64,000 bases of DNA, from positions 62,001 through 126,000 of the IMG/VR virus record IMGVR_UViG_3300010158_000027. The stretch is one strand, 5' to 3'. Of the stretch, positions 27,843 to 57,935 are shown piece after piece. Every line of letters begins with the position of its first letter. Positions within the stretch are counted from its first letter, which is position 1. The position numbers were made by a program, and so were the translations under genes. The notes under the pieces are model-generated. The model ran no database searches and was not told the origin of the DNA. It saw only the letters and a list, made by a program, of their open reading frames with translations.

Positions 27843-28589
27843 TTAATATTCGTTATTTATTTTTCTTATAGTTTCTAAATACAGTGTCTTATATTTTTTA
27901 AGATATATCCTGATTTCCTTTGTATTGAGATTTGTCATTTCTCTTATCGCTAAGAGTACGATATTTTTGTTAAATTTATTATTATCGTTACCTATAAAAA
28001 TATTACCGTAGTTTTCAAATAATTCGATCAATGCGTTCCCTAATTTGAATTCATTATCATTTAACTTTGTCCCATCTACGTAGTTTTTTAAGTCCGTTAA
28101 AAAAATGTCTATTATTTTTTGAGCGTCCATTTTTTCAAACTCTATGTAGTATATCATATCAGGACGATTCTCTAAAGTTGCCGAAATGTCTTCGTATGAA
28201 ATTTTTCTATTTGTGTCTTTTTGATCCTTTTGTATTTGACCCATTAAATAGTTCTTACAAATGGTACCGAAATACGAATATGCTTTCTTATTTTTAGCGG
28301 GTTTAAACTTATCTACCTTTGTCATAAGAAATGAATGTGTGTCAGCATGAACATCAACATATTCCATATTTTTTCTGTAGAGTTTATATCTTCGTATGAT
28401 AGATTCTATCATCTTATCTAGCGGCTCTTTAAGAAATTTATTATAAATCTCTTCTTTTTCTTCGTAAGATTCGGCAGTGATATATCTTTTCACTGCCTCC
28501 TCCTCACGAACATCAAAGTAATTGGTTTTGTTTTTTTTTACTTCCTTTTGCGTTTCACTATCTTGAGTATCTTTTACATCTAAAATCAT
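27843..28589 (-). CDS. gp55: late-transcription sigma factor, T4 gp55-like
   Basis: KFKPAKNKKAYSYFGTICKNYL resembles the gp55 region-2 motif FDPEK..NPFAYFTQI. Confidence 0.65.
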   Translation of the reverse strand: MILDVKDTQDSETQKEVKKNKTNYFDVREEEAVKRYITAESYEEKEEIYNKFLKEPLDKMIESIIRRYKLYRKNMEYVDVHADTHSFLMTKVDKFKPAKNKKAYSYFGTICKNYLMGQIQKDQKDTNRKISYEDISATLENRPDMIYYIEFEKMDAQKIIDIFLTDLKNYVDGTKLNDNEFKLGNALIELFENYGNIFIGNDNNKFNKNIVLLAIREMTNLNTKEIRIYLKKYKTLYLETIRKINNEY

Positions 28590-29401
28590 TAAACGTTTTG
28601 TAGTTCATATTTTATATTTCTATCAGATGTGAAGAAATGTTCTTTTTTTGCTGACTCTAACCAAAACGTAACCTCGTCATCTGAGATTTTTTCTTCACCA
28701 AATTTATAATTCCAAAAAATAGAACCTTCTCTCATATTGGTGTGTTTGTACCCAATTCTCGGTATTGTCATAATTTTAACAGAATTATATGTCAATCTAA
28801 GTAAGAATTCATATACAAATGTTAATTTGATTGATGGTTTAAATCCTCCGTTATCTTCGTACACTGATTTTTTTATAACTATTCCACTTGATTGGAAATT
28901 TTGGTATGTCAATAAAACGTCATTTGTTAAGTATCCTATCTCACTATTCAAACTAACTGCGAATGTCGCCTCATTAGTGAATCCAGCAAATACTCCTTTA
29001 TCGTCAGTATCAACAACCAAAGGTAGGAACGATTCAACTTCAGGATATGCTTCAATAAATCGATTCACATTTTTAAACCAAATAGATGAATATTCGTCAT
29101 CAAATTCTAAAATTGATACCCACTTACTTTTTGCGTTTTTAACACCAAAATTAACCTGAGTTGCGAAATCTTTATCCCCCGTGTTTTCTACTATGTTAAC
29201 ATCCAACCCTTCGAAATCGTAAGTAGATAAATAGTTTTTAAGTGTCTCCTCACCAGTATGAACAATAACCAACTCATTAATACCTACCGTTTGGTTCTGT
29301 ACCGATTTAATCGATCTCTCAAATAATTCTTCAAATGATCTGTGTTTAGCTGAATCAATCGGTAATATAACCGATACGTCTAATTTTAATTTCTCCTCCA
29401 T
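28589..29401 (-). CDS. glycosyltransferase family 2
   Basis: VSVILPI, VNFGV...WVSILEFDDEY, YEFLLR. Confidence 0.85.
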   Translation of the reverse strand: MEEKLKLDVSVILPIDSAKHRSFEELFERSIKSVQNQTVGINELVIVHTGEETLKNYLSTYDFEGLDVNIVENTGDKDFATQVNFGVKNAKSKWVSILEFDDEYSSIWFKNVNRFIEAYPEVESFLPLVVDTDDKGVFAGFTNEATFAVSLNSEIGYLTNDVLLTYQNFQSSGIVIKKSVYEDNGGFKPSIKLTFVYEFLLRLTYNSVKIMTIPRIGYKHTNMREGSIFWNYKFGEEKISDDEVTFWLESAKKEHFFTSDRNIKYELQNV

Positions 29402-29402
29402 A

Positions 29403-30467
29403 TTAGTTTTCTTCTGTTATTTTTAGTTTATCTAGTTGTTCTGAGAATAATTTATGTCTTATTTCAAAATACTCCCCAAATGTTAATAGTACTTCATCTT
29501 TAAATTTTTCCTCGTCTCTATATTTTGAAGATGTAGTTTCCATTTCAACATATAAATCATCATTTATGTTATCCTCTAACCAGTTTTGAGTAAAATTCGC
29601 AACCACATCAACGATATCATTTATTTCTTGAGTCCATACACCGTTAGTGTCGCTCATCCATTCAGGTCTTAGTGCTGGTATTTTACCAATTACTGGTGTA
29701 CCGCACGACATTGACTCTAATGGGAAAGTACCGAATCCTGATTCATAATCAACCCAAACTGAAAGATATGTTTCTTTTAAAAATTTAGCAAAATCATCTT
29801 GTTTAATCCCTCTCATATCTCTAAAAGTAATCCATCTATATTGTGGGTATTTTAAGTAAAAAGTTTTAATAATTTTTGCAGTATCTCTCGGTTCTCTAGT
29901 GTGGATAGAAATGATAGGTTTAGATGGTTTCTCTTTTTTACTAAACACACTTGGTAATGTTGGTTGGATAATGTCCAAACTAACCCCTTTCATTACATCA
30001 GAAATGTATTTTTTCTGAGGTTCTGACGTTGTTATACATTTTAAGAACCCATATTGTGACCAAGATAATCCAGGAGGTAACGTTTCTAACATGTGATCAT
30101 ATGCTTGACATAAAACAATTTTACCACAAGGGAAGTTTTTAATCTGATCCATAACGTGACCGTAAACTTCTGGAATTACAATTAAATCTTCTGGTGAGAT
30201 TGCTAAATTTTGTCCTTCGATTGATTGGTGGGGTAAATCCATATATGTCTCATCTAACCAATCAGACACTCCTTTGTAATCATTACTCTCATGAATAATA
30301 ATCGGATTGTATCCATTATTTTTTAGTTTTAATGCGATATCATAGATGTATCTAACACCAGCCTTTGGGTTACCTTTAGTGTCCTGCACCAAGAAATAAA
30401 CCCTAGCGTTTTTATCCTCTAAGTTTTTTAGGGACTGCTCAATCTTTTCAATTTTTTCTAATTCCAT
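29403..30467 (-). CDS. GT-B fold glycosyltransferase
   Basis: ESGFGTFPLESMSCGTPVIG is an E-X7-E-type donor-binding motif. Confidence 0.8.
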   Translation of the reverse strand: MELEKIEKIEQSLKNLEDKNARVYFLVQDTKGNPKAGVRYIYDIALKLKNNGYNPIIIHESNDYKGVSDWLDETYMDLPHQSIEGQNLAISPEDLIVIPEVYGHVMDQIKNFPCGKIVLCQAYDHMLETLPPGLSWSQYGFLKCITTSEPQKKYISDVMKGVSLDIIQPTLPSVFSKKEKPSKPIISIHTREPRDTAKIIKTFYLKYPQYRWITFRDMRGIKQDDFAKFLKETYLSVWVDYESGFGTFPLESMSCGTPVIGKIPALRPEWMSDTNGVWTQEINDIVDVVANFTQNWLEDNINDDLYVEMETTSSKYRDEEKFKDEVLLTFGEYFEIRHKLFSEQLDKLKITEEN

Positions 30468-45816: not shown

Positions 45817-46549
45817 CGTTTAATAGTCTTATTATGTCTTGCGTTGATAAACCATTTTGGCTTGCCATCGTTTTTATTTGTTTTAAATTTCTTTTTAATA
45901 GAGATTTGATAACCTCATTATTTTTGTGGTCTTTAGGTTGCTTATCCAAAATGATATCCTCATCTATTTCTTCACTCTCATCCAATCCCTTCTCTTTTAA
46001 AATTAACCTATCAATAAAATTATTTTTATCTTTTATTTTTTTAGGTACTTTTTTATGTAGGTTAGGTTTTTTACCTTGTTGTAATGTCCTTTCTTCTGCG
46101 GAATCTTTATCCAATCCCAACTCATCTTTATAGTATTTTACGGTGTCTTTGTAACCCATAAATTTAGTAGCTTCAAATCCAAAGGCATCCTCCATATCTT
46201 CCTCTGCAACCACACCTTCACCGTAATATCCGTACCACCCTCTTAATAGTGGATCTCTTGGATTTCTAGCCATCCCAACGGTTTTATCCATAGTTGTTGA
46301 TCCTTTAACGGTAGATGCCGGATCTAATATCGGAATGTCAGATGAATTCCATGTTCCGTCAAGTCCAACTAATTCCGTAACCTCCTCCTCATTTCCTTCT
46401 TTTTTTGTTTTTGATTTAAAAATTTCATGACTTTTACATGGCATATATTTTCTATTACCATCTTCATTGTGATAGTGTGATCCACTACAGTTTAAAGTTT
46501 TGGCAACCCTTTCGGCTCTTTCCTTTGTAGAATATTTATATGATTTCAT
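45806..46549 (-). CDS. hypothetical protein with an N-terminal Cys/His motif
   Basis: AKTLNCSGSHYH...YMPCKSH may bind metal; preceded by TATTTATA. Confidence 0.7.
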   Translation of the reverse strand: MKSYKYSTKERAERVAKTLNCSGSHYHNEDGNRKYMPCKSHEIFKSKTKKEGNEEEVTELVGLDGTWNSSDIPILDPASTVKGSTTMDKTVGMARNPRDPLLRGWYGYYGEGVVAEEDMEDAFGFEATKFMGYKDTVKYYKDELGLDKDSAEERTLQQGKKPNLHKKVPKKIKDKNNFIDRLILKEKGLDESEEIDEDIILDKQPKDHKNNEVIKSLLKRNLKQIKTMASQNGLSTQDIIRLLNDEQ

Positions 46550-46562
46550 ATCCGCTTTTACC

Positions 46563-46590
46563 TATAAATACTGCGAACAAACTATTTATC
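46563..46590. promoter_or_regulatory. back-to-back putative late promoters
   Basis: TATAAATA (46563-70, reading TATTTATA on minus) and TATTTATC (46583-90), 13 and 11 nt from divergent ATGs. Confidence 0.55.
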
Positions 46591-46601
46591 ATAAAAAAAG
46601 A

Positions 46602-49271
46602 ATGCCGAGCCAAAACATAAATTCATATTATTACCCAAAATATCGAACAAAATTAAACTATGGACATTATTTTGATCTTACCTTGGCTTCTGACGAAAGA
46701 GGATACGATGAGGAGGTGGTGTTCTCAAATAAGTTAATCGGGGAGGATGACGGTAATAGGTTACCTATATTTATAGATTTAAACAACACATTAACAACTA
46801 CCCAACCCTTTATTAATTTTGGTGATTATATTTCAGGTAACACTTTAGTATCTAAAAATTATTATAATCCAAACAGTTTAGATTTAACTTGTTTAACGGC
46901 ATATACAAGTACATGTGATATTGGGCTTGTGGGAACCGATAATGGATTATATACCGAACTAACGGGTCAACCGTTACAATATACTATGGGTGTAGATGAT
47001 ACCCATAAATTCGATCCTCATTATAGAGACAGACGATTTAAAATGCATCCAGTGACGGGATATACTCAACCACCTAATGTTGTTTTTTCGGGTCGACCAA
47101 AAGATTCTATTTATAACATGGTTTATAAATCTGATCCGGTTATCGGTTATTACCAAGAACTTTATGGTGGATTCTATCAGGGGTTTTATAAATTAAACGG
47201 ATATGATTATGAAGTTTTTCCTGAGAGAATAAATAAGGGGTGGTCGGTAGAGATGGTTTTAAAACCGAGAACCAACGATGAATATTTTATTAACAACTCA
47301 ACTGAAGAATATTTAAACAACAAATACCCAAATAATAGTGGAACTTTCTTTTATTTTGGTACAAGAGCTGAAAACAAATTTTACCATAATGCTGAGGGTT
47401 CACCAAGTTCCGATAGTGGATATACAAGAAATACTGAAGATTTAACTTGTTTATCATCTTGTGCTTGTACCAACACTGGGGTCACAAACGCCAATTGTGT
47501 TGATATATATCCAAGTAGTGGGTTCACTACCATACATAATGTTGGGTGTAATTGTGGATGTGCTAGTACTGAGCGAGTACCGTTTCCTGAGACTAATCCA
47601 ATGTTCGATGTTTTATCAAACGCACTTTCGTTTAGATTTAATGGTTGTTCGGAGAATCCAAGTATCGGGGTTAAATATATTAAAATTACTGGATCATGTG
47701 TAACCACCGGAACATGTGAAACAACGGGAACCACATTCCAAACGGGATATACGATAACTGAAGTGTTTTCGGATCCAATCTACGACATATGTGGAATTGA
47801 GTGTGGTGATCTTATACCTGATAGATGGGTTATGATTAGTGCGGTTTTTGAGAGATATCGCACCATAGAGGATTGTGATTTACAAAATCTGGGGGGATTA
47901 AACGATATGCGAACGGTAACTACCCAATCATCTTTAGATGGTAATTCATATAGACTAATCAGTCCACCCCAAACACATACAGGATCAATTCTCGAACCTG
48001 AAATCCACAAAATTAATTTTAAAACTAAATGGTTCGATGATTTAAAATATAGATTGGGAACTTTAAAACTATACGTAAACGGTTATCTGTTTATGATAAT
48101 TGAAGATTTTGAAGAGGTTATCCCAAGAGAATTAAATACAGAAAAAGAAAAACAAGTCGGGGTTCCGTTTAACATTTCTTTTGGTGGGGGAACGCAAGGA
48201 TTACATGATCATTTAATTTTTTCAGGGTGTTCACAACCTAACGGACCATACACACAAGATCCCGAGTTATTTCCAAATAATATATTAAGTGGAACAACAT
48301 TGAGTGGGTTATCAACAAATATTTTACTGGAAGAGAATTTTGGTGGAACATTTATGGGGGGGATATCTCAATTTAGAATGTATACCGAACCGTTGGATTT
48401 TACGCAGATACAACACAATACTAGAATATTAAAAGATAAATTCGGTTTATTTGATTATTATTGCCCATCATGTTATGACGGTTATATAGTATTAAACATT
48501 CATACTGTTATTAACGTATATAGTGGTAGTATCATTTCAAATATTACTGTTAATAATGATTTCCCAGTACCTTCAGATACGACTGTTGGGTATGATGTTA
48601 CCTTAAACGTAATAAGTGGATCACCAATCAATCTTAAAGGTGAAATCATCATACCTAAAGGTCAGATGACAGCATCTAAATTAATAACGATAGACGACTC
48701 GTACGGTAGATTGGTTAATGATGCGATAATAAAACCTCCATTTGTTACTATGGGTAATAATAATATTAGAGTTAATCACGTAATAGAAAGGGATATGATA
48801 ATATACGAATCTCCAGTATTACCTAAACCAACACCAATACCTACGGCAACACCTACGTCGACACCAACAACAACACCGACAGGTACTTTAACATCGACAC
48901 CAACAATGACACCTACACCAACGCCGACACCGACTCCGATGTTAGGGGTTGCGTATTATGGTAAAATTAATAAGAAAAATATTAACCAAACTGATGTTGG
49001 GTTATTGGATGAATTGTTAACGAACGATATATTATCAACACACATAAATTATGTGGATGAACAAGGTTATTGTTATTTATTAATTCCAGAAACATTTACT
49101 CAACCTGAAACATTTAGAGACAGTGAAGAGGGTTGTGATGGATTTATTATTCCGTTTATTCAGACGGAAACTTTAAATATTTCTGACGATTTCGGAAATG
49201 TGATTATTTATTATGTATATAGATCATTTGTGTCCACTTATTCAAGTGTGGATGTATGGGTTTGTAATTAA
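46602..49271 (+). CDS. large virion-like protein, LamG/ConA-like, Cys-rich, with a Pro/Thr linker
   Basis: GWSVEMVLK...FFYFG, LKLYVNG, NISFGGG, FMGGISQFRMY resemble LamG strands; PT tract at 48822-48938; start placed at ATG 46602. Confidence 0.6.
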   Translation: MPSQNINSYYYPKYRTKLNYGHYFDLTLASDERGYDEEVVFSNKLIGEDDGNRLPIFIDLNNTLTTTQPFINFGDYISGNTLVSKNYYNPNSLDLTCLTAYTSTCDIGLVGTDNGLYTELTGQPLQYTMGVDDTHKFDPHYRDRRFKMHPVTGYTQPPNVVFSGRPKDSIYNMVYKSDPVIGYYQELYGGFYQGFYKLNGYDYEVFPERINKGWSVEMVLKPRTNDEYFINNSTEEYLNNKYPNNSGTFFYFGTRAENKFYHNAEGSPSSDSGYTRNTEDLTCLSSCACTNTGVTNANCVDIYPSSGFTTIHNVGCNCGCASTERVPFPETNPMFDVLSNALSFRFNGCSENPSIGVKYIKITGSCVTTGTCETTGTTFQTGYTITEVFSDPIYDICGIECGDLIPDRWVMISAVFERYRTIEDCDLQNLGGLNDMRTVTTQSSLDGNSYRLISPPQTHTGSILEPEIHKINFKTKWFDDLKYRLGTLKLYVNGYLFMIIEDFEEVIPRELNTEKEKQVGVPFNISFGGGTQGLHDHLIFSGCSQPNGPYTQDPELFPNNILSGTTLSGLSTNILLEENFGGTFMGGISQFRMYTEPLDFTQIQHNTRILKDKFGLFDYYCPSCYDGYIVLNIHTVINVYSGSIISNITVNNDFPVPSDTTVGYDVTLNVISGSPINLKGEIIIPKGQMTASKLITIDDSYGRLVNDAIIKPPFVTMGNNNIRVNHVIERDMIIYESPVLPKPTPIPTATPTSTPTTTPTGTLTSTPTMTPTPTPTPTPMLGVAYYGKINKKNINQTDVGLLDELLTNDILSTHINYVDEQGYCYLLIPETFTQPETFRDSEEGCDGFIIPFIQTETLNISDDFGNVIIYYVYRSFVSTYSSVDVWVCN

Positions 49272-49284
49272 AATTTATATGTGA

Positions 49285-49779
49285 ATGGTAAAATTTAACA
49301 CTAGTGGTGGAATTGGCGTAATGGGCTTTATTAGTCCAATGGACTCTAGGGACACATATGCGGTTGTTGACCCATTATATGGTATTGACGGGTTAAGAAA
49401 CGTTGACACATTAGACGATTTAAACGAGATTCCTGAGGACAGACGACGTTCGGGGATGATTGTCGGTGTTAGTGGTGGTACCGTATATTATAAATTAAAA
49501 GATGTAGAGTGGATAGGTGAAATTATTGATTGGATTGAAATCGATTTCACAAAAATAACACATGTAGATAAGGAATCACCAATTGGATTAATCGACGGAA
49601 TTAATAATACTTTTGAATTATTATATGACCCAATACCAAATTCCGAACATTTATATTTAAATGGATTATTAAACGATTCGGGGGTAGATGAGGACTATTT
49701 AATCGATGGTAAAGTAATTTATTTCTCAATTCCTCCAGATATTGGTATGAAAATTAAGTGCAGTTACAGAACTTTTTAA
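49285..49779 (+). CDS. tail-fibre-associated module protein
   Basis: N-terminal LNEIPEDRRRSGMIV; C-terminal LYLNGLL...DY...F.IPP is shared with the 1127-aa protein. Confidence 0.55.
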   Translation: MVKFNTSGGIGVMGFISPMDSRDTYAVVDPLYGIDGLRNVDTLDDLNEIPEDRRRSGMIVGVSGGTVYYKLKDVEWIGEIIDWIEIDFTKITHVDKESPIGLIDGINNTFELLYDPIPNSEHLYLNGLLNDSGVDEDYLIDGKVIYFSIPPDIGMKIKCSYRTF

Positions 49780-50076: not shown

Positions 50077-50335
50077 TTTTTTTTATCGATTTTGGGCTTT
50101 TGCGAAAGTTCATGATATTTATATAAAAATGATTTTACCGTTTGGTAAAACGATTACTATTTATATTTAAAAATCTTATTTAAAATCCTTATTTACAACC
50201 CTTATTTGTATTCCGTGAGATCGCACGAATATTTTTTTCATGCCCTCTAAGTCCATTATTTATATTTATCATTCAAGGATTTTTCCTACTCGTGTAAAGT
50301 TCACATAATAAATAAATAATTAAAAACAAATTTTT

Positions 50336-53300
50336 ATGTCAAATACTAAAATTGTCTTAAATAGACAGTCCGATTTAATATTGGACAATGCGGAAATTAC
50401 ATCACCAGTTGGTATCGTCTTAGCTGACATCGCTGGAGCTACTGATGCAATATCTGCTGAAGAATCATTAAGAATAGCTGGTGTTGAACAAGTAACTCAA
50501 CTGGTAAAAACGGAACAAGATACTCGCGTCGCTGCTGTATCTACTGAAGAGTCTGCTCGTATCGCTGGTGATGCTAACCTTCAAAACCAAATCGACAATG
50601 TACTATCTAATGTTGATGGTGCTGCTTTGGATTCATTAACTGAAATCGTTGGAGCATTCCAATCTGCTGATGATGACTTGAATGGTGCTATCACACTTTT
50701 AGCTAACACTGCAAGTTCTGCATTGTCAACTGAAGTTGAAGCTCGTATCTCTGATGTTGATGCTGAACAAGCAAGAGCTGAATCAGCTGAAGCTGTATTG
50801 ACTGCTGATTTATCTGCTGAAGTTTCTCGTGCAATGGCTGCTGAAGACGCAATGGATAATAGATACTCTACAGAAATCTCTAATGAAGAGTATGCACGTA
50901 TCGCTGCTATAAACGCAGAAGAATCTGCTCGTATCGCTGCTGTTGATGCTGAACAAGCAAGAGCAATGGATGCTGAAGCTAGTTTATTCGATTCTATCCT
51001 TTCTGAAGAAGGTAGAGCAATGGATGCTGAAGCTAGTTTAGCTACATTTATCGCTGCTGAACACAGTGAACACATCGCAAACGAATTATCTATCGTTACG
51101 GCAATGGATGCTGCTGATTCAGCTGAAGCATCTGCTCGTATCGCTGGTGATGCATCTTTAACTGCTGATTTGTCTGCTGAAGTTGCTGCTCGTGGAACTG
51201 CTGTTGATGCTGAAGAATCTGCAAGAATTGAACAATTTAAGTTTTTAGATTATAAACATAACGTACGTGAATCTGAATTGACTTCTGATTTATCAAGTGA
51301 AGTTGCTGCTAGAGGAAATGCTATCGATAATGAAGCATCTGCAAGAATCGATGGTGACCAATCACTACAAAACCAAATTGATTTCATCACAGACAACACT
51401 GATGCTGCTGCAATTGATTCATTAACTGAAATCGTTGCTGCTTTCCAAAGTGCTGACGGAGAAATCAATGGTGCAATTACTACATTAGCTGATGCTGCTG
51501 GAGCTAACTTGTCAACTGAAGTTGCTCGTGCTACAAGTGCTGAAGGTGTATTAACTGCTGATTTATCTTCTGAAGTTGCTGCAAGAGAAGCTGCTGTTTC
51601 TATGGAAGAAGCTGCTCGTATTGCTGATGTTGATGCTGAAGAGTCAAGAGCTATCGCTGCTGAAGGTGTATTAACTGCCGATTTATCTACTGAAGTTGCT
51701 GCTCGTATCGCTGATGTTGATGCTGAAGAGTCTCGTGCTATTGCTGCTGATGAGTCAATCGCTGCTGGTTTATTTGATGAAATCGTTGATAGAGCTGCTG
51801 CGGTTTCTACTGAAACATCTGCACGTATTGCTGACGTTGATGCTGAAGAATCTCGTGCTATTGCTGCTGAAGGTGTATTAACTGCCGATTTATCTGCTGA
51901 AGCATCTACTAGATATGCTAACGATTACAAATTGACATCTGATTTAAATTCAGAAATCACAAACAGAGGAAATGCTGTTGATGCTGAAGCGTCTTACAGA
52001 GTTGCTGGAGATTTATCTCTACAAAACCAAATTGACTTCATCACAGAAAACATCGACCCAGTTGCTATCGATTCATTAACTGAAATCGTTGCTGCTTTCC
52101 AAACTGCTGATGGTGATATTAACGGAGCAATTACTACATTAGCTGATGCTGCTGCTGCTGGTTTATCAACTGAGGTTGAAAGAGCTACAAGTGCTGAAGG
52201 TGTATTAACTGCTGATTTGTCTACTGAAGTTGCGGCTCGTATTGCTGATGTTGATGCTGAAGAATCTGCTCGTATCGCTGCTGTAAATGCTGAAGCGTCT
52301 ACTGCTAGAGCTGCTGAAGGTGTATTAACTGCTGATTTATCAAGTGAAGTATCTGCAAGAATCGCTGACGTTGATGCTGAAGAAGCAAGAGCAATGTCTG
52401 CTGAGTTAGTTTTAACAAACGATTTATCTGCTGAAGTTTCTAACAGAATAGCTGATGTTGATGCTGAAGAATCAAGAGCTACTGCTGCTGAAGCGGTATT
52501 GACTGCTGATTTATCAAGTGAAATGTCTGCACGTATTGCTGACGTTGATGCTGAAGAAGCAAGTAGAGTTAAAGCTGATGCATTTATTACTAAAGAATTA
52601 TCTTCTGAAGTTTCTAACAGAGGAACTGCTGTAACTGCTGAAGCATCTTACCGTGTTTCAGGTGATTTGTCACTTCAAAACCAAATTGACTTCATTACAT
52701 CTAACGTTGATGCTGCGGCAATCGATTCATTAACTGAAATCGTTTCTGCATTCCAATCTGCTGATGGTGATATCAACAACGCAATCACTACATTAGCTGA
52801 TGCTGCTGGTGCTAACTTGTCAACTGAAGTTGCAAGAGCTGAAAGTGCTGAAGGTGTATTGACTGCTGATTTATCAAGTGAAGTATCTGCTCGTTTAGCT
52901 CAAATCCAATCAGTGGGTAATGATATTGATGATGAAAAAGCATCAAGACAAGCCGCTGTTTCTGCTGAAGTATCTGCTCGTATCTCTGATGTTGATGCTG
53001 AAGAATCAAGAGCTATCGCTGCTGAAGGTGTTTTAACATCAGATTTATCTTCTGAAGTTGCTAACAGAGAAGCTGCAATATCTGCTGAAGAATCAATGAG
53101 AGTTGAAGCTGATGCATCTATCGCTGCTGAATTGTCTTCTGACATTGCTGGATTAGCTGATGTTGATGGAACAACTATCGTTCTTAACGGTGGTACTAAC
53201 CAAATCGAATTAGCTGACGAAGTTGCTGCTGGTGCTGGTGGAAATAGAACGTTCTTAGGTGAAATCGATATCGAAACAATCTTGAAAGTAGGTGGTGTTG

Positions 53301-53719
53301 ATGTAATGGCTGAAATTAGTTCAGAAATTGCAAGAGCTGAAGCTGCTGAAGCGTCTATCGCTGAAGAATTGTCTACTGAAGTATCTTACTTAATCGCTAA
53401 CACAGATTTAGGTTCAATTGACTCATTCGCTGAGATGGTTGATACATTAAACTCTGAAATATCTCGTGCTGAAAGTGCTGAAGTTAGTATGACTGCGGAT
53501 TTCGTAAATATCTACGCTAAACACGTTGGAATCGAAGCTCCAAATGGTACTAAAACACTTTTCGTTCTTGGTACTCCAGTTAGAACAGGTTCAGAATTAG
53601 TATACTTGAATGGTTTGTTATTGACTCCATCTGAAGATTATACTATGAATGGAAATGATGTTGAATTCTCTATCGCTCCTGCAGCAACTGATACAATCAG
53701 TGCTTACGGTGTATGTTAA
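50336..53719 (+). CDS. long Ala/Glu-rich coiled-coil fibre protein with nested repeats
   Basis: About 29-aa units EVAARIADVDAEESRAIAAEGVLTADLSS; four LQNQID...DSLTEIV.AF blocks; strong GCT/GAA codon bias. Confidence 0.75.
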   Translation: MSNTKIVLNRQSDLILDNAEITSPVGIVLADIAGATDAISAEESLRIAGVEQVTQLVKTEQDTRVAAVSTEESARIAGDANLQNQIDNVLSNVDGAALDSLTEIVGAFQSADDDLNGAITLLANTASSALSTEVEARISDVDAEQARAESAEAVLTADLSAEVSRAMAAEDAMDNRYSTEISNEEYARIAAINAEESARIAAVDAEQARAMDAEASLFDSILSEEGRAMDAEASLATFIAAEHSEHIANELSIVTAMDAADSAEASARIAGDASLTADLSAEVAARGTAVDAEESARIEQFKFLDYKHNVRESELTSDLSSEVAARGNAIDNEASARIDGDQSLQNQIDFITDNTDAAAIDSLTEIVAAFQSADGEINGAITTLADAAGANLSTEVARATSAEGVLTADLSSEVAAREAAVSMEEAARIADVDAEESRAIAAEGVLTADLSTEVAARIADVDAEESRAIAADESIAAGLFDEIVDRAAAVSTETSARIADVDAEESRAIAAEGVLTADLSAEASTRYANDYKLTSDLNSEITNRGNAVDAEASYRVAGDLSLQNQIDFITENIDPVAIDSLTEIVAAFQTADGDINGAITTLADAAAAGLSTEVERATSAEGVLTADLSTEVAARIADVDAEESARIAAVNAEASTARAAEGVLTADLSSEVSARIADVDAEEARAMSAELVLTNDLSAEVSNRIADVDAEESRATAAEAVLTADLSSEMSARIADVDAEEASRVKADAFITKELSSEVSNRGTAVTAEASYRVSGDLSLQNQIDFITSNVDAAAIDSLTEIVSAFQSADGDINNAITTLADAAGANLSTEVARAESAEGVLTADLSSEVSARLAQIQSVGNDIDDEKASRQAAVSAEVSARISDVDAEESRAIAAEGVLTSDLSSEVANREAAISAEESMRVEADASIAAELSSDIAGLADVDGTTIVLNGGTNQIELADEVAAGAGGNRTFLGEIDIETILKVGGVDVMAEISSEIARAEAAEASIAEELSTEVSYLIANTDLGSIDSFAEMVDTLNSEISRAESAEVSMTADFVNIYAKHVGIEAPNGTKTLFVLGTPVRTGSELVYLNGLLLTPSEDYTMNGNDVEFSIAPAATDTISAYGVC
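50570..53100 (+). repeat. nested coding repeats in the fibre gene
   Basis: LQNQID blocks begin near 50578, 51364, 52018 and 52673; the last three are about 654 nt apart. Confidence 0.85.
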
Positions 53720-53744: not shown

Positions 53745-53778
53745 AATGGGGGAGGTTTACCTCCCCTATTGTGTTTTT
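53745..53778 (+). terminator. intrinsic terminator
   Basis: AATGGGGGAGG-TTTA-CCTCCCCTATT followed by GTGTTTTT. Confidence 0.7.
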
Positions 53779-53811
53779 ATAATAAACAATTAAAAATTAA
53801 AAAATTAAAAA

Positions 53812-54225
53812 ATGACACAGAATAAACTTAGAGTGAAAGGTGTTAATAGTGGTGGTGGAACATATCCATCTATGTTATATAACATTGACGCAATTAATGA
53901 TGGTCCATTCCAATTCAATCATATTCGTTATGATGCAAATCAACCTCAAATCTTAACTAACGTATTACAAATTAGTACCATGGGTAGAAATGGTGATAAC
54001 TTTGATTTATTACAAATCATCCAAACCAATCAATTAATTCGAATTACACAAGAAGGTAATCCATCAATTTACCAACAATTCCGAGTTATGGGTGGAGGTC
54101 AGATTACGAAAGGAACGAATGGTGTTTCACCTATATCACCATATATTACATACCCAGTAGCATTTGATGTATTCACTATATCGGATTTTCCACATGATAT
54201 ACCAGTAATCGTTACTGTAGTATAA
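53812..54225 (+). CDS. hypothetical protein starting with a KLRVKGV tag
   Basis: MTQNKLRVKGV...; shares a 16-nt leader with the LRR genes. Confidence 0.75.
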   Translation: MTQNKLRVKGVNSGGGTYPSMLYNIDAINDGPFQFNHIRYDANQPQILTNVLQISTMGRNGDNFDLLQIIQTNQLIRITQEGNPSIYQQFRVMGGGQITKGTNGVSPISPYITYPVAFDVFTISDFPHDIPVIVTVV

Positions 54226-54256
54226 ATAAACAATTAAAAATAAAAAATAAAAAATT

Positions 54257-55732
54257 ATGGCAACATTCATAACATCCAAATCAGTTGGACAAACAATCAA
54301 CATTTGGGTTCAAACATCAACTGGATTTTGGAAATATAATCACGATGGAAGTGATTCAAGTGTATTTGACCAAGATGATGGTTGGGCAAACAATATACCA
54401 GTTATAAACGCAAACGGTGAATTCACAATTATATCATGTTTATCTGATGGTACAGTTAGTGGAGATATAACTCAGTTGAATTTAGAAAATAACCAATTAA
54501 CATCATTTGACGGAACTGGTTTAGAGAGTTTAACTAATTTATATTTACCTAGTAATCAATTAACATCATTGGATGGATTTATTTTTCCAACAAGTTTAAC
54601 TACTTTTATTTTAGCAAATAACCTCTTTACATCATTTGATGGAACTGGATTAAGTGGTCTACGTCTTTTGAATTTAACTGATAACCAATTAACATCATTT
54701 GACGGAACTGGTTTAACAAGTTTATTTGAGTTGTATTTAGAAAATAACCAATTAACATCAATTGATGTGACTGGTTTATCTAGTTTACTACGTTTGCGTT
54801 TACAAAATAACCAATTCACATCAATTGATGTGACTGGTTTATCTAGTTTAGTCGGTTTGAATTTAAATCAGAACCAATTAACATCATTTGATGGAACTGG
54901 TTTATCTAGTTTACTTGAATTGAGTTTAGATAATAACCAATTCACATCAATTGATGTGACTGGTTTATCTAGTTTAACTTGGTTGGGTTTACAACAAAAC
55001 CAATTAACATCATTTGATGGAACTGGTTTATCCGGTTTACTTCAATTATATTTATCTAGTAACCTTTTAACTTCATTTGATGGAACTGAGTTAGTGAGTT
55101 TAACACGATTGGGGTTAAGTATTAACCAATTAACATCATTTGACGGAACTGGTTTAGTGAGTTTAACTTGGTTAGACTTAAATAGTAACCAATTAACATC
55201 ATTTGATGGGACAGATTTAACAAATTTAACTGAGTTGTCTTTAGGTGTTAACCAATTAACATCATTAGATGGGTTTATTTTACCAACAAGTTTAATTAAT
55301 TTGGATTTAAACAATAACCAATTAACATCATTTGATGGTAATGGACTATCTAGTTTACATGTTTTAAATATTAATAGCAACCAATTAACATCATTTGACG
55401 GAACTGGTTTAGTGAGTTTAACTCAATTGTATTTATCTAATAACCTTTTAACATCACTTGATGTTACTGATTTAGTGAGTTTAGTTGGTTTGTATTTAAC
55501 TGATCTTAAAATAGGTAGTAATCCAATTACACCGTTATCAAACAATCAAATCATACATCAACTTAACCAACATAATGTACAATATGGTCAATTTTATTCA
55601 AATGGTGGTAGAACATCTGCAGGCGATGCTGATTATGATAACTTAGTAAGTTTAGGTTGGAATTTCTATGGTTTAGATTTAATCATTGTTGGAAGTGGTA
55701 AACTAAGAGTAAAAGGTGTAACAACTATTTAA
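54257..55732 (+). CDS. leucine-rich repeat protein (16 full repeats plus one partial)
   Basis: 21-22-aa LxxLxLxxNQLTSFDGTGLSS units between conserved caps; ends GSGKLRVKGVTTI; no signal peptide. Confidence 0.92.
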   Translation: MATFITSKSVGQTINIWVQTSTGFWKYNHDGSDSSVFDQDDGWANNIPVINANGEFTIISCLSDGTVSGDITQLNLENNQLTSFDGTGLESLTNLYLPSNQLTSLDGFIFPTSLTTFILANNLFTSFDGTGLSGLRLLNLTDNQLTSFDGTGLTSLFELYLENNQLTSIDVTGLSSLLRLRLQNNQFTSIDVTGLSSLVGLNLNQNQLTSFDGTGLSSLLELSLDNNQFTSIDVTGLSSLTWLGLQQNQLTSFDGTGLSGLLQLYLSSNLLTSFDGTELVSLTRLGLSINQLTSFDGTGLVSLTWLDLNSNQLTSFDGTDLTNLTELSLGVNQLTSLDGFILPTSLINLDLNNNQLTSFDGNGLSSLHVLNINSNQLTSFDGTGLVSLTQLYLSNNLLTSLDVTDLVSLVGLYLTDLKIGSNPITPLSNNQIIHQLNQHNVQYGQFYSNGGRTSAGDADYDNLVSLGWNFYGLDLIIVGSGKLRVKGVTTI

Positions 55733-55763
55733 AATAAACAATTAAAAATTAAATAAAAAAATT

Positions 55764-56660
55764 ATGGCAACATTCATAACATCCAAAGCAGTTGGAGAAT
55801 CAATCAACATTTATGTTCAAACATCAACTGGATTTTGGAAATATAATCACGATGGAAGTGATTCAAGTGTAAAGGCAAATGGTTGGGTAGAATATATACC
55901 AGTAGCGAACATAAACGGTGAATTCACAATCATTTCATGTGATTCAGATGGTACAGTTAGTGGTGATATAACTAATTTACATTTAAATGATAACCAATTA
56001 ACATCATTTGACGGAACTGGTTTATCTAGTTTAAATATTTTGAATTTAAATAGTAACCAACTAACATCATTTGACGGAACTGGTTTATCTAGTTTAACTG
56101 ATTTGAATTTATATAATAACCCATTAACATCATTTGATGGAACTGGTTTATCTAGTTTAACTGAGTTGAATTTACGTAATAACCAATTAACATCATTTGA
56201 CGGAACTGGTTTATCCAGTTTAACTACTTTGAATTTAAGTGGACCTAGAGGTGGTGGTGGGACACTAACCTCAGTTAGTAACCTTCCATCAAGTTTAATT
56301 AATTTAAATTTACAAAGTAACCAATTAACATCATTTGATGGAACTGGTTTATCTAGTTTAACTCATTTATATTTATCTAGTAACCAATTAACATCATTTG
56401 ACGGAACTGGTTTATCTAGTTTAACTTATTTGTATTTATTTGGTAATCCAATAAACCAATCATCCGTAAACAATCAAATCCTAAATCAACTTAATCAAAA
56501 TGGATTATCTGGTGGTTATTTTGAATCTAACAATGGTAGAACATCGGCAAGTAACACTGATTATGATAACTTAATAAGTTTAGGTTGGAGTTTTAATGGT
56601 TTAGATTTAATCATTGTTGGAAGTGGTAAACTAAGAGTTAAAGGTGTAACAACTATTTAA
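55764..56660 (+). CDS. leucine-rich repeat protein paralogue (7 repeats plus one partial)
   Basis: Same N-cap (MATFITSK...TGFWKYNHDGSDSS) and C-cap as the neighbour. Confidence 0.92.
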   Translation: MATFITSKAVGESINIYVQTSTGFWKYNHDGSDSSVKANGWVEYIPVANINGEFTIISCDSDGTVSGDITNLHLNDNQLTSFDGTGLSSLNILNLNSNQLTSFDGTGLSSLTDLNLYNNPLTSFDGTGLSSLTELNLRNNQLTSFDGTGLSSLTTLNLSGPRGGGGTLTSVSNLPSSLINLNLQSNQLTSFDGTGLSSLTHLYLSSNQLTSFDGTGLSSLTYLYLFGNPINQSSVNNQILNQLNQNGLSGGYFESNNGRTSASNTDYDNLISLGWSFNGLDLIIVGSGKLRVKGVTTI

Positions 56661-56689: not shown

Positions 56690-56716
56690 AAGGGACTCAA
56701 ATCGAGTCCCTTTTTT
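56690..56716. terminator. probably bidirectional intrinsic terminator
   Basis: AAGGGACTC-AAATC-GAGTCCCTT-TTTT between convergent genes. Confidence 0.8.
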
Positions 56717-56735
56717 ATATTATAAAAATCATATT

Positions 56736-57935
56736 TCATTTTAAGTTTTTATACAAATTTGTTTTCGGATTATATTCCAAACCATCATTACCCCCATTAA
56801 ACAAGTTATGAATTAATTTATCATATGTTTTAACCAATTTCATATTATCCGCATGATATCTCATCAATACCTTATCGTTACGTTCATTATACGAGTCAAT
56901 ATTCTTATCATGCTCAGTTAATATGTAATCCAATTGTTTAGCACCATCAACGGTATCTGAACCTTCATAGTAATAACCCAAATCTTTACACATCGGAGCG
57001 TTATGTAATACTGGATATCCCATATACGCAGCATCCAAATAAATGTAATTTAATGGATTTAATATTTGATGACAGATTAATACGTCAATATGTTGGGTTA
57101 ATATAAATGCTGTTTGATATCTACTTTCGGATGTTATTTTATTGTCTTTAAATAAATCAAAAGTCCTAATCATTCCCATGAACTCCTTGTGTTTAGCAAC
57201 TTTCTCGGAATTGGTTAACATTAATTTATCTATATGTTCTTTACCTATATCTCCACGATACGATTCTTCGGCAATCATTGCTGGTATAAGACAAAATTTA
57301 ACCATGTTAAGGTTCGGTTCCATCACACCCAATCGTTTCTTTTCTTTACCGATGTTGTATCGATAATCTTTTTTAAATGAACCCTTTTTAAATCCTTTTT
57401 CAATATCAACAAGAGCCTCTAGTAGATATTGGTGATGCCATATGAAAGGGACGATAAACGCTTTAGACCGATATAGTGTATGATAATAACCACAATTAGT
57501 TTCATGTTGTTGAGGTATATACCATATTTCATCATATGCTTCATCGAATTGATAAACTTTTTTCTCATCTTCTTTAAACAGGATGTTTTCAGCACTTAGA
57601 ATATAATTGTTACCACATTTGTATGCAATTATTTTTTTATTCGGTTTTGATTTAAACTTCTCAATTTCAGATTTATTAATCTGAGCTCCCATAACGATTA
57701 ACAAATCCATGTCTTCGTAATGGTCTTTAAAGTTGCAAATGTTAACATCGGTTAAATAACTTGGTTTAGTCGACCAATCAACATCGATTGTGTTTAATAA
57801 AGTTATTTCATATTTCTCATTCGAGTTTTTTAACAACTTAGTTAACATCAATATGTTTTGTTTAATTCCGTTTGTCCAAATCGACTCTTTATTATCTTTT
57901 AGACCGAGTGTAATTCCAATTTTTAAATTTTTCAT
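56736..57935 (-). CDS. DUF2827-like putative glycosyltransferase
   Basis: SIWTNGIKQN, CGNNY, HQILNPLNYIYLDAAYMGYPVLHN...GYYY pattern recalled from DUF2827. Confidence 0.65.
   Translation of the reverse strand: MKNLKIGITLGLKDNKESIWTNGIKQNILMLTKLLKNSNEKYEITLLNTIDVDWSTKPSYLTDVNICNFKDHYEDMDLLIVMGAQINKSEIEKFKSKPNKKIIAYKCGNNYILSAENILFKEDEKKVYQFDEAYDEIWYIPQQHETNCGYYHTLYRSKAFIVPFIWHHQYLLEALVDIEKGFKKGSFKKDYRYNIGKEKKRLGVMEPNLNMVKFCLIPAMIAEESYRGDIGKEHIDKLMLTNSEKVAKHKEFMGMIRTFDLFKDNKITSESRYQTAFILTQHIDVLICHQILNPLNYIYLDAAYMGYPVLHNAPMCKDLGYYYEGSDTVDGAKQLDYILTEHDKNIDSYNERNDKVLMRYHADNMKLVKTYDKLIHNLFNGGNDGLEYNPKTNLYKNLK

What the first reader, a model, noticed from the sequence alone, without database searches (positions are those of the whole stretch)
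53812..56660. Shared KLRVKGV tag at the N-terminus of one protein and the C-termini of two others
Seen: 53812..54225 begins MTQNKLRVKGV, and both LRR proteins end GSGKLRVKGVTTI. The 137-aa protein is otherwise unrelated to the LRRs. Inference: this is a position-independent docking peptide that attaches different payload domains to a common partner, plausibly the adjacent fibre, giving a plug-in accessory system.
Basis: partly seen in the sequence, partly recalled or inferred. Interest (0 to 1): 0.7.

Follow-up and report, generated by a model that had tools for sequence, protein, structure and literature searches.

The report
Movable docking tag on phage fibre accessories
A seven-residue basic peptide (KLRVKGV), set between flexible linkers, is conserved at the start, middle or end of many unrelated binding proteins encoded just after the fibre gene of an uncultured giant phage lineage, and most likely clips these modules onto the virion, although the binding partner is not shown.

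Summary
KLRVKGV occurs three times in the 281-kb genome: residues 5-11 of the 137-aa protein and the last residues of both LRR proteins. A lone shared 7-mer is not rare here (about 14 per shuffled genome). Its position and its conservation are what make it real.

- In the 137-aa family the tag region is invariant down to 42% identity. AlphaFold2 places it in a disordered tail outside the fold.
- 35 distinct contexts were collected from related contigs: 15 N-terminal, 15 internal, 5 C-terminal.
- Payloads include LRR, DUF285, CBM5/12, an arabinofuranosidase-like domain and a fibre-knob-like domain.
- The tag is often flanked by Pro/Thr/Gly linkers. In some proteins it ends a 25-35-residue linker with nothing after it.
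- Codons vary while the residues do not.
- In every locus with enough flank, tagged genes directly follow the coiled-coil fibre gene.
- The fibre's acidic C-terminal domain models as a T4 gp10-like XD2/XD3 docking module.

This looks like a variant of the known branching-domain plus conserved-peptide systems for receptor-binding proteins. The new feature is that the tag's position is free. Binding to the fibre is inferred only: the one co-fold gave no answer.

The parts
49285..49779 (+). 164-aa protein. Its N-terminal domain is shared with large fibre-like paralogues elsewhere in the genome. Its C-terminal ~65 aa (49582-49776) is the same XD-like domain as the fibre C-terminus, making it a candidate second acceptor.
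   Evidence: hhalign against the fibre C-terminal alignment: probability 95%, E 3.5e-8. One of only two copies of this domain in the genome. Shares 7-mers with the 846-aa ORF at genome 27907-30444. Homologues give weak PHROG 'tail fiber protein' hits.
50336..53719 (+). 1127-aa, very acidic (net charge -155) coiled-coil fibre. Conserved N-terminus, repetitive helical shaft, and a C-terminal ~67-aa beta domain (about 53507-53716) that is the candidate acceptor.
53745..53770 (+). Terminator-like GC hairpin plus T-run between the fibre gene and the 137-aa gene.
   Evidence: The hairpin and downstream leader are near-identical in related contig L001.
53782..53797 (+). 16-nt upstream element ATAAACAATTAAAAAT, copy 1 of 3 exact copies (others at 54226-54241 and 55734-55749), one before each tagged gene. 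A 2-mismatch copy lies at 50312-50327 before the fibre gene.
   Evidence: 3 exact copies, all 15-22 nt upstream of the ATGs. With up to 2 mismatches there are 6 matches in the window, against 1.6 expected.
53812..54225 (+). 137-aa protein: MTQN leader, tag, NSGGG linker, then a ~118-aa beta-sandwich 'knob' domain.
   Evidence: AF2 model: residues 1-18 have pLDDT below 50 and no secondary structure; residues 20-137 have pLDDT 74-91. Foldseek against BFVD matches the terminal globular domain of collagen-repeat phage fibre proteins (E about 1e-7, TM 0.65-0.72). In-frame stops lie 2 codons upstream of the ATG.
53824..53844 (+). Tag copy 1 (KLRVKGV), N-terminal.
   Evidence: Invariant in family alignment A1 down to 42% identity.
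54257..55732 (+). 491-aa LRR protein: conserved MATFITSK N-terminal domain, LRR_4/LRR_8 repeats, C-cap, GSG, tag, TTI-stop.
   Evidence: Pfam LRR_4 E 5e-42; sequence.
55700..55720 (+). Tag copy 2, C-terminal.
55764..56660 (+). 298-aa LRR protein, a paralogue of LRR491 with the same N-terminal domain, C-cap and C-terminal tag.
   Evidence: Pfam LRR_4 E 9e-26. 56% identical over its whole length to residues 1-321 of the fusion protein P0008.
56628..56648 (+). Tag copy 3, C-terminal.
56690..56712 (.). Terminator-like hairpin closing the cassette, between LRR298 and the convergent DUF2827 gene.
   Evidence: sequence.
56736..57935 (-). DUF2827 protein (399 aa), the conserved right-hand border of the variable cassette.
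   Evidence: Pfam PF10933 E 1.8e-99. 65-99% identical homologues border the cassette in L007, L011, L016, L009, L020 and L051.

Best explanation
KLRVKGV (consensus G/N-K-L-R-V/I-K-G-V-N/T-S/T-G-G) is a short linear docking motif. It is a basic, amphipathic, beta-strand-like heptapeptide held between flexible Gly/Pro/Thr linkers. It attaches interchangeable binding modules non-covalently to the virion. The modules seen are LRR solenoids, DUF285/BspA-type repeats, a CBM5/12-type domain, an arabinofuranosidase-like beta-sandwich and the fibre-knob-like 137-aa domain. The most likely acceptor is the acidic T4 gp10-like (XD2/XD3-type) beta-jellyroll at the C-terminus of the coiled-coil fibre encoded immediately upstream. 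The homologous domain of the 164-aa protein is a possible second acceptor. Because the tag is a self-contained peptide on a leash, it works at an N-terminus, at a C-terminus or between two domains. Its coding segment is the constant boundary at which payloads are swapped between related phages. Shown: the motif's distribution, its amino-acid-level conservation, its disorder in the model, the synteny, the acceptor-like fold and the recombination breakpoint. Inferred: that it binds anything, and that the partner is the fibre domain.
For: (1) Conservation. M[TS]QN-KLRVKGV-NSGG is invariant in seven homologues of the 137-aa protein down to 42% identity. A 45%-identical member has KTRVKGV.
(2) The tag lies outside the fold. 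AF2 gives residues 1-18 pLDDT below 50 and no secondary structure, while the domain scores 74-91.
(3) Position independence. There are 35 distinct contexts: 15 N-terminal, 15 internal, 5 C-terminal, on at least seven unrelated payload types (Pfam).
(4) A tag on a leash. P0025-27 have the LRR cap, then 25-35 residues of Thr/Pro linker, then GSG-tag-TTSI-stop. Several internal copies sit between PPPSGNG and a poly-Thr run. The C-terminal form persists between LRR proteins only 41-46% identical in the cap.
(5) Selection acts on the protein. Across 17 distinct DNA copies Leu uses 5 codons, V/I 6, Gly 3, Val 3 and Arg 2, and the only amino-acid change is V/I.
(6) The tag is not a generic linker. 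Tandem LRR modules in P0021 and P0023 are joined without it.
(7) Synteny. Every locus with enough flank has the tagged genes directly after the fibre homologue and before DUF2827. Several loci have a single tagged protein (L016, L007, L051), so another tagged protein is not needed in the locus.
(9) Charge. The domain carries net -3 to -7, against +3 for the tag. Charge complementarity is reported for G7C and CBA120 (PMC6872550, PMC8825819).
(10) Precedent. Conserved docking peptides of 7-11 residues bind T4gp10-like domains in K1E/K1-5/SP6 and Klebsiella phages (PMC6872550), and this was validated experimentally (PMC13352976).
(11) Payload swap. The window and L001 are DNA-identical from the upstream hairpin through ATG, tag and GGG (48 nt of CDS), then unrelated.
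Against: No binding evidence exists. The co-fold of the fibre C-terminus x3 with the 137-aa protein x3 scored 0.00, which the tool states is no answer.
Many motif copies were found with a motif-based DNA pattern, so invariance of the core in those copies is partly by construction. The unbiased sets are.
Known docking peptides are N-terminal. Internal and C-terminal use has no precedent that I know of.
The LRR proteins also have their own conserved N-terminal domain, which could be their real anchor.
The fold of the window LRR C-terminus was not modelled. There the tag might pair with the preceding LDLIIV strand.
Confidence: 0.5

Rival explanations
1. Tag-to-tag association. The heptapeptide is a self-pairing strand, forming a beta-zipper or small oligomer, through which tagged proteins bind each other. 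Split halves (LRR-tag and tag-137-aa domain) would then reassemble into the equivalent of the fused protein, or tagged proteins would oligomerise.
For: P0008 is a natural fusion: LRR298-like (56% identity, E 4e-93) and 137-aa-like (60% identity) joined by one tag. This is a Rosetta-stone argument that the window's LRR and 137-aa proteins work together. At split sites both halves keep a copy. In L042, one gene ends tag-NTSR-stop and the next gene starts MALG-tag about 30 nt later. The window has exactly three tagged proteins.
Against: Loci with only one tagged protein between the fibre and DUF2827 genes (L016, L007, L051) would require homo-oligomerisation. A strand with three basic residues on one face is a poor candidate for self-association without an acidic partner. 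There is no structural test.
Confidence: 0.17
2. Recombination junction only. The motif is a conserved linker whose coding sequence serves as the crossover point for shuffling modules, as conserved motifs do in T-even adhesin genes. It would then have no binding role of its own, and its presence at N-, C- and internal positions would simply record past crossovers.
For: The homology breakpoint lies exactly after tag-GGG between the window and L001. All architectures can be derived from each other by crossovers at the tag.
Against: Copies within and between genomes differ at synonymous sites, and the longest exact runs are about 8-10 nt, while the amino acids are invariant. That indicates protein-level selection, not DNA identity. 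The C-terminal tag is kept at the end of a long Thr/Pro linker with no payload after it, in proteins only 41-46% identical to the window's. The N-terminal tag is as conserved as the core strands of the 137-aa family although it is disordered in the model.
Confidence: 0.12
3. Processing or modification site. The basic motif is recognised by a protease, a transpeptidase or a modifying enzyme. Glycosyl- and sulfotransferases are encoded in the same cassette region in relatives. The result would be cleavage of leaders or domains, or modification of the linker.
For: An exposed, conserved, basic motif in flexible linkers is what enzyme recognition sites look like. Glycosyltransferase, sulfotransferase and APS-kinase genes sit beside tagged genes in L051; syntenic unannotated ORFs occupy the same position in L009 and L020. 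DUF2827 always flanks the cassette.
Against: No other protein in the genome carries the motif, so a dedicated enzyme would have three substrates. Cleavage at a tag 3-4 residues from the C-terminus or 4-7 from the N-terminus would achieve little. The motif has no Ser/Thr/Asn acceptor in its invariant core. There is no resemblance to known phage prohead-protease sites (my own knowledge).
Confidence: 0.08

Closest known systems
Branched receptor-binding-protein systems: a T4 gp10-like (XD2/XD3) branching domain plus a conserved docking peptide (phages K1E/K1-5/SP6, Klebsiella KP32/KP34 groups, G7C, CBA120; PMC6872550, PMC13352976, PMC8825819)
   Same: A short conserved peptide (as short as 7 residues) is carried by interchangeable secondary proteins. 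A small beta-jellyroll docking module sits on a primary fibre or spike encoded next to them. The payload is hypervariable with recombination breakpoints at the tag boundary. Flexible Gly-rich linkers are present. The charge complementarity resembles G7C and CBA120.
   Different: Here the peptide also occurs at C-termini and internally between two domains; known ones are N-terminal. The candidate docking module is at the C-terminus of a ~1100-aa coiled-coil fibre and of a 164-aa protein, not near the N-terminus of a tailspike. The payloads are LRR/DUF285/CBM/knob binding modules rather than depolymerase beta-helices, and LRR payloads are probably monomeric. The interaction itself is untested.
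Cohesin-dockerin assembly of cellulosomes (my own knowledge)
   Same: A plug-in logic: diverse modules carry a common tag, joined by Pro/Thr-rich linkers to a scaffold, and the tag is usually terminal but is found at either end.
   Different: Dockerin is a ~70-residue Ca-binding domain, not a heptapeptide. There is no sequence or Pfam similarity.
Conserved motifs as crossover points in T-even distal tail-fibre and adhesin genes (my own knowledge)
   Same: Short conserved segments mark the boundaries at which specificity modules are exchanged. A breakpoint at the tag is seen here.
   Different: Copies here are not conserved at the DNA level, and the tag persists where nothing follows it.
T4 fibritin-type coiled-coil whiskers (my own knowledge)
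   Same: A long segmented trimeric-looking coiled coil with a small terminal domain. In relative L010 it is encoded close to a gene with a weak head-tail adaptor (connector) PHROG hit.
   Different: No sequence match was found. The C-terminal domain is XD-like, not a foldon.

Membership tests
Branched RBP system (branching domain + conserved docking peptide) | The primary fibre or spike carries a T4 gp10 XD2/XD3-type beta-jellyroll docking module. | tested here: met
Branched RBP system (branching domain + conserved docking peptide) | Secondary proteins share a short conserved peptide at the N-terminus, followed by divergent payloads. | tested here: met
   15 N-terminal contexts on at least 6 payload types. 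The first 16 residues are 100% identical between the 137-aa protein and the unrelated 511-aa protein of L001. Twenty further contexts are internal or C-terminal, which the family definition does not include.
Branched RBP system (branching domain + conserved docking peptide) | The peptide physically binds the branching domain and is needed for incorporation into the virion. | tested here: inconclusive
   Complex prediction with fibre C-terminus x3 and the 137-aa protein x3 scored 0.00. The tool states this is no evidence for or against. Experiments are needed.
Branched RBP system (branching domain + conserved docking peptide) | The tagged proteins are virion receptor-binding proteins. | not testable with these tools
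   The payloads are binding-type domains (LRR_4/LRR_8, DUF285, CBM_5_12, fibre-knob-like fold). No virion proteome or host is available, because the lineage is uncultured.
Leucine-rich repeat proteins (Pfam LRR_4 / LRR_8) | Tandem LRR units score above the Pfam gathering threshold. | tested here: met
   LRR491: LRR_4 at 141 bits and LRR_8 at 105 bits. LRR298: 90 and 66 bits. The cut-off is 27.
Cohesin-dockerin | A dockerin domain (~70 aa, duplicated Ca-binding loop-helix) on the payloads. | tested here: not met
   No dockerin or cohesin Pfam hit in any of the 19 proteins scanned. The conserved element is 7-12 residues long.
DNA-level recombination motif (T-even adhesin type) | Copies share enough nucleotide identity to act as homologous crossover sites. 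| tested here: inconclusive
   Within the window the copies differ at 3 of 7 codons. Between the window and L001, however, the orthologous 5' segment is identical and the breakpoint falls right after the tag linker.
Isopeptide tag/catcher pairs | A reactive Lys/Asp/Asn triad in a split Ig-like domain, completed by the tag strand. | not tested
   Considered only because the tag has two invariant lysines. No catcher-like split domain was identified.

The most novel reading that the evidence does not exclude
The heptapeptide is a natural, orientation-free 'plug' that works at either terminus or in mid-chain. A single acceptor module on a phage fibre could then be loaded with any mixture of adhesin modules. 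Internally tagged proteins would project two different binding domains from one docking point. This would amount to a phage equivalent of a cellulosome, built from a 7-residue tag rather than a domain, and would be directly usable as a minimal protein-assembly tag.
Probability: 0.3. Interest if true: 0.75.

Novelty: new variant of a known kind. Interest (0 to 1): 0.6.

Why it matters
If the tag docks as proposed, it extends the 'branching domain plus conserved peptide' principle of phage host-range modules in three ways. It reaches an uncultured jumbo-phage lineage. It covers non-enzymatic payloads (LRR, DUF285, CBM, knob). It frees the tag's position to be N-terminal, C-terminal or internal. 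That would explain how these phages exchange and combine adhesin modules by swapping anything next to a 7-residue constant segment. It would also offer a very small natural tag-acceptor pair for protein assembly, and it gives an annotation rule for finding virion-associated accessory proteins in metagenomic phage contigs of this group.

Tried and rejected
- Chance. Isolated shared 7-mers are common genome-wide, about 14 per shuffle. Chance was rejected on position, adjacency and conservation in homologues.
- A genome-wide tag system. Rejected: there are only three copies, all in this cassette.
- A DNA repeat or recombinase site. The copies are direct but differ at synonymous sites, and no long DNA identity exists between them.
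- Read-through or frameshift fusion of the fibre to the 137-aa protein. Rejected: a terminator hairpin, a 92-nt gap and in-frame stops lie 2 codons before the ATG.
- The tag as part of the 137-aa fold. Rejected by the AF2 model.
- The tag as a universal inter-module linker. Rejected by P0021 and P0023.
- Searches that led nowhere: tblastn of the 137-aa protein and of the LRR C-cap against GenBank phages; Pfam and PHROG scans of the 137-aa protein; Foldseek of the 137-aa model against PDB; full-text search for the motif strings.
- The co-fold gave no answer.
- DNA for several metagenome contigs, including those encoding P0002, P0003 and P0008, could not be fetched.
- Pattern hits in GC-rich or short frames (L013, L019, L021, L026, L028, L030, L031, L036, L045, L047, L048, L050) were treated as chance.
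Full report
**Observation**

The window is positions 62001-126000 of a single 281,269-bp virus record estimated 96% complete. Its G+C content is about 33%. It has no close cultured relative. Its family-B DNA polymerase is only 24-26% identical to those of Salinibacter phages. The only DNA-level hits are LRR repeats of Tenacibaculum phages.

- 53812-54225 encodes a 137-aa protein beginning MTQN-KLRVKGV-NSGGG.
- 54257-55732 (491 aa) and 55764-56660 (298 aa) are LRR proteins ending GSG-KLRVKGV-TTI.
- A six-frame scan of the whole genome finds just these three copies.
- Apart from the heptapeptide, the 137-aa protein and the LRR proteins do not align.

I will call the heptapeptide the tag.

**Is it more than chance?**

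Taken alone, no. Shuffled proteomes of this genome share 8-23 7-mers between different ORFs, and the real genome has about two dozen such singletons. Three things make it real.
- Position. It lies within 11 residues of an N-terminus and 10 of a C-terminus.
- Adjacency. The genes carrying it are neighbours.
- Comparative data, described below.

**Conservation in homologues**

The 137-aa protein has seven homologues of 126-138 aa in metagenomes. M[TS]QN-KLRVKGV-NSGG is invariant down to 42% overall identity. An exhaustive profile-free search added two more:
- a 45%-identical member with KTRVKGV;
- a 442-aa protein, P0008.

P0008 is the important one. Its residues 1-321 are a full-length homologue of LRR298 (56% identity, E 4e-93). 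Its residues 312-441 are a homologue of the 137-aa protein (60% identity). The two parts are joined by one tag (GNG-KLRIKGV-TTGVGS). The window's LRR and 137-aa proteins are therefore split versions of an architecture that also exists fused, and in the split version both halves keep a copy of the tag.

**Distribution**

Pattern scans of viral, metagenome and genome collections, plus a homology search with the LRR C-cap, gave 35 distinct tag contexts: 15 N-terminal, 15 internal and 5 C-terminal.

N-terminal tags follow 3-7-residue leaders (MTQN, MPINxxG, MALG, MAINIYG). They precede:
- the 137-aa domain;
- an unknown domain plus LRRs (L001, 511 aa; its first 16 residues are identical to the window protein's);
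- DUF285 repeat proteins (PF03382, E 1e-66 to 1e-159);
- a 178-aa family;
- an arabinofuranosidase-B-like domain;
- a complete LRR protein.

Internal tags lie between the LRR C-cap and one of the following:
- a ~45-aa CBM_5_12 domain;
- the 137-aa domain;
- larger unknown domains.

C-terminal tags end LRR proteins with TTI, TTSI, TTGI or NTSR before the stop.

Three features argue for a self-contained linear motif.
- The tag is often isolated between flexible segments, for example PPPSGNG-tag-NSGGG-poly-Thr.
- In P0025-27 it sits at the very end of a 25-35-residue Thr/Pro linker with nothing after it. Those proteins are only 41-46% identical to the window's in the cap region.
- Tandem LRR modules can be joined without it (P0021, P0023), so it is not a generic linker.

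One caveat applies. Copies found with the DNA pattern are invariant in the core by construction. The homology-ascertained sets show the true variation: KTRVKGV, KLRVKGF, KLRVRGV and KKLRIRGV.

**Level of selection**

Across 17 distinct DNA copies, Leu uses five codons, the V/I position six, Gly three, Val three and Arg two. The only amino-acid change is V/I. The constraint is on the peptide, not on the DNA.

**Structure**

An AlphaFold2 model of the 137-aa protein (9-sequence alignment) has mean pLDDT 76.5.
- Residues 1-18 (leader, tag and Gly linker) score below 50 and have no secondary structure.
- Residues 20-137 form a beta-sandwich at pLDDT 74-91.
- The domain matches the terminal globular domain of collagen-repeat fibre proteins of uncultured phages and cyanophages in BFVD (E about 1e-7, TM 0.65-0.72).
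- Nothing in the PDB matches significantly.

So the 137-aa protein is a fibre-tip-type knob with no shaft of its own, only the tag.

**Genomic context**

In every locus with enough flank, the tagged genes lie directly downstream of a homologue of the 1127-aa coiled-coil fibre. They lie upstream of a convergent DUF2827 gene. Between these conserved borders the content is hypervariable.

Several loci have a single tagged protein: L016 (tag-DUF285), L007 (LRR-tag-CBM) and L051 (LRR-linker-tag).

Between the window and the closely related L001, the DNA is identical from the terminator hairpin after the fibre gene through the ATG, tag and GGG codons. It is then unrelated. The payload was swapped with the breakpoint right after the tag linker.

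In the window, an exact 16-nt element precedes each of the three tagged genes, and a 2-mismatch copy precedes the fibre gene.

**A candidate acceptor**

The fibre's last ~67 residues are conserved across all loci (alignment A3). They are homologous to the C-terminus of the 164-aa protein encoded two genes upstream (hhalign 95%, E 3.5e-8). These are the only two copies in the genome.

The AF2 model (domain pLDDT 85-92) gives these structural matches:

|---|---|---|
| CBA120 TSP4 XD2 (187-250) | 8.6 | rmsd 2.0 A |
| CBA120 TSP4 XD3 (265-333) | 8.2 | rmsd 2.0 A |
| Phage LME-1 portal-tail chain | 8.8 | |
| T7 gp17 N-terminal domain | 6.0 | |

Other phage fibre-attachment modules also match.

In CBA120 and T4 gp10, the XD2/XD3 jellyrolls are the platforms on which other trimeric tail proteins dock (PMC8825819). 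In K1E/K1-5/SP6 and Klebsiella phages, secondary receptor-binding proteins dock on T4gp10-like domains through conserved N-terminal peptides as short as seven residues (PMC6872550). This has now been confirmed by engineering (PMC13352976).

The domain here is acidic (net -3 to -7). The 164-aa copy is -6 and the whole fibre -155. The tag is +3 within otherwise acidic proteins.

**Direct test**

The one available co-fold used the fibre C-terminus x3 with the 137-aa protein x3. It scored 0.00, which the tool defines as no evidence either way.

**Interpretation**

I rank the readings as follows.

| Reading | Confidence |
|---|---|
| Short linear docking motif; I would put the fibre and 164-aa XD-like domain specifically as the acceptor at about one in three | ~0.5 |
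| Tag-to-tag pairing that reunites split halves | ~0.17 |
| Crossover junction with no binding role | ~0.12 |
| Processing or modification site | ~0.08 |

- Docking motif: the tag plugs interchangeable binding modules onto the virion.
- Tag-to-tag pairing: supported by the P0008 fusion and by the L042 split, where one gene ends with the tag and the next begins with it. Weakened by loci with a single tagged protein.
- Crossover junction only: supported by the breakpoint. Contradicted by synonymous variation under strict amino-acid conservation, and by terminal tags on leashes.
- Processing or modification site: glycosyl- and sulfotransferase genes neighbour the cassette in L051. But only three substrates exist in the genome, and terminal cleavage would achieve little.

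**Comparison and novelty**

Functionally this resembles the known anchor-branch receptor-binding complexes. It meets two of their defining features: an XD-type module at the level of predicted structure, and a conserved short peptide on divergent secondary proteins. The third feature, the physical interaction, is untested.

It departs from them in four ways: tag position (C-terminal and internal as well as N-terminal), location of the acceptor (C-terminus of a long coiled coil and of a 164-aa protein), payload type (LRR, DUF285, CBM, knob), and lineage. I therefore rate it a new variant of a known kind, of moderate to high interest.

Noticed in passing
window 53782-53797, 54226-54241, 55734-55749; variant at 50312-50327: An exact 16-nt AT-rich element (ATAAACAATTAAAAAT) sits 15-22 nt upstream of the ATG of each of the three tagged genes. 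A 2-mismatch copy precedes the fibre gene. It is probably a shared late promoter or translation leader. TATAAATA overlaps the stop codon of the 137-aa gene.
   Followed up: partly
window 49285-49779 and genome G000:C1 27907-30444, 40723-43119, 43449-45335, 183835-185136 (outside the window): The N-terminal part of the 164-aa protein shares 7-mers (DPLYGID, VGVSGGT) with the 846-aa ORF at 27907-30444. That ORF belongs to a family of four large paralogous ORFs (846, 799, 629 and 434 aa). This suggests a common anchor domain on several fibre-like proteins.
   Followed up: no
genome G000:C1 1523, 14150, 224433, 254488, 273075 (ORF starts, outside the window); also 142, 2973, 58376, 189793, 229365, 233772, 235172: Other short motifs recur in otherwise separate ORFs. 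MKIIITE(SQ) is shared by five ORFs. RLTESDL or LTESDLT occurs in at least seven ORFs. These may be paralogue families or further shared tags.
   Followed up: no
L051 8928-11428; L009 5975-7789; L020 3494-5314: In L051 the cassette next to the tagged genes carries Glyco_transf_25, two sulfotransferase-like genes and an APS kinase. L009 and L020 have unannotated ORFs of the same sizes (204, 188 and 217 aa) at the same position. Together with poly-Thr/Pro linkers and the flanking DUF2827, this hints at glycosylation or sulfation of fibre-associated proteins.
   Followed up: no
L009 9186-11126; L020 6740-9037: Some relatives encode a second, shorter fibre paralogue (MAETKIVLNRQSDLILDN..., ending ...TITIYGVYDNRMLP). 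Its XD-like domain is uncharged rather than acidic.
   Followed up: no
window 50336-53719: The fibre has net charge -155 and is built of recurring helical blocks (ADVDAEESRA..AAEGVLTADLS) separated by conserved NQIDFIT...IDSLTEIV..FQSADG segments. Long antisense ORFs inside it look like composition artefacts.
   Followed up: no
window 46500-49271: A 923-aa protein with a ~40-residue Pro/Thr linker. Its Cys-containing C-terminal domain (ending ...VDVWVCN) is also found on a 428-aa protein in L001 (3822-5108). This is another modular structural protein just upstream of the cassette.
   Followed up: no
L001 9543-9917 / L002 6140-6514: The close relative has an extra 124-aa ORF between the fibre gene and the first tagged gene that is absent from the window.
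   Followed up: no
L042 (contig CANGUP010000043.1, 22.5 kb, labelled a Flavobacteriaceae MAG): A contig binned as a Flavobacteriaceae genome carries the same fibre and tagged-LRR cassette. It may be a phage contig or a prophage, and it is the only hint of the host group.
   Followed up: no
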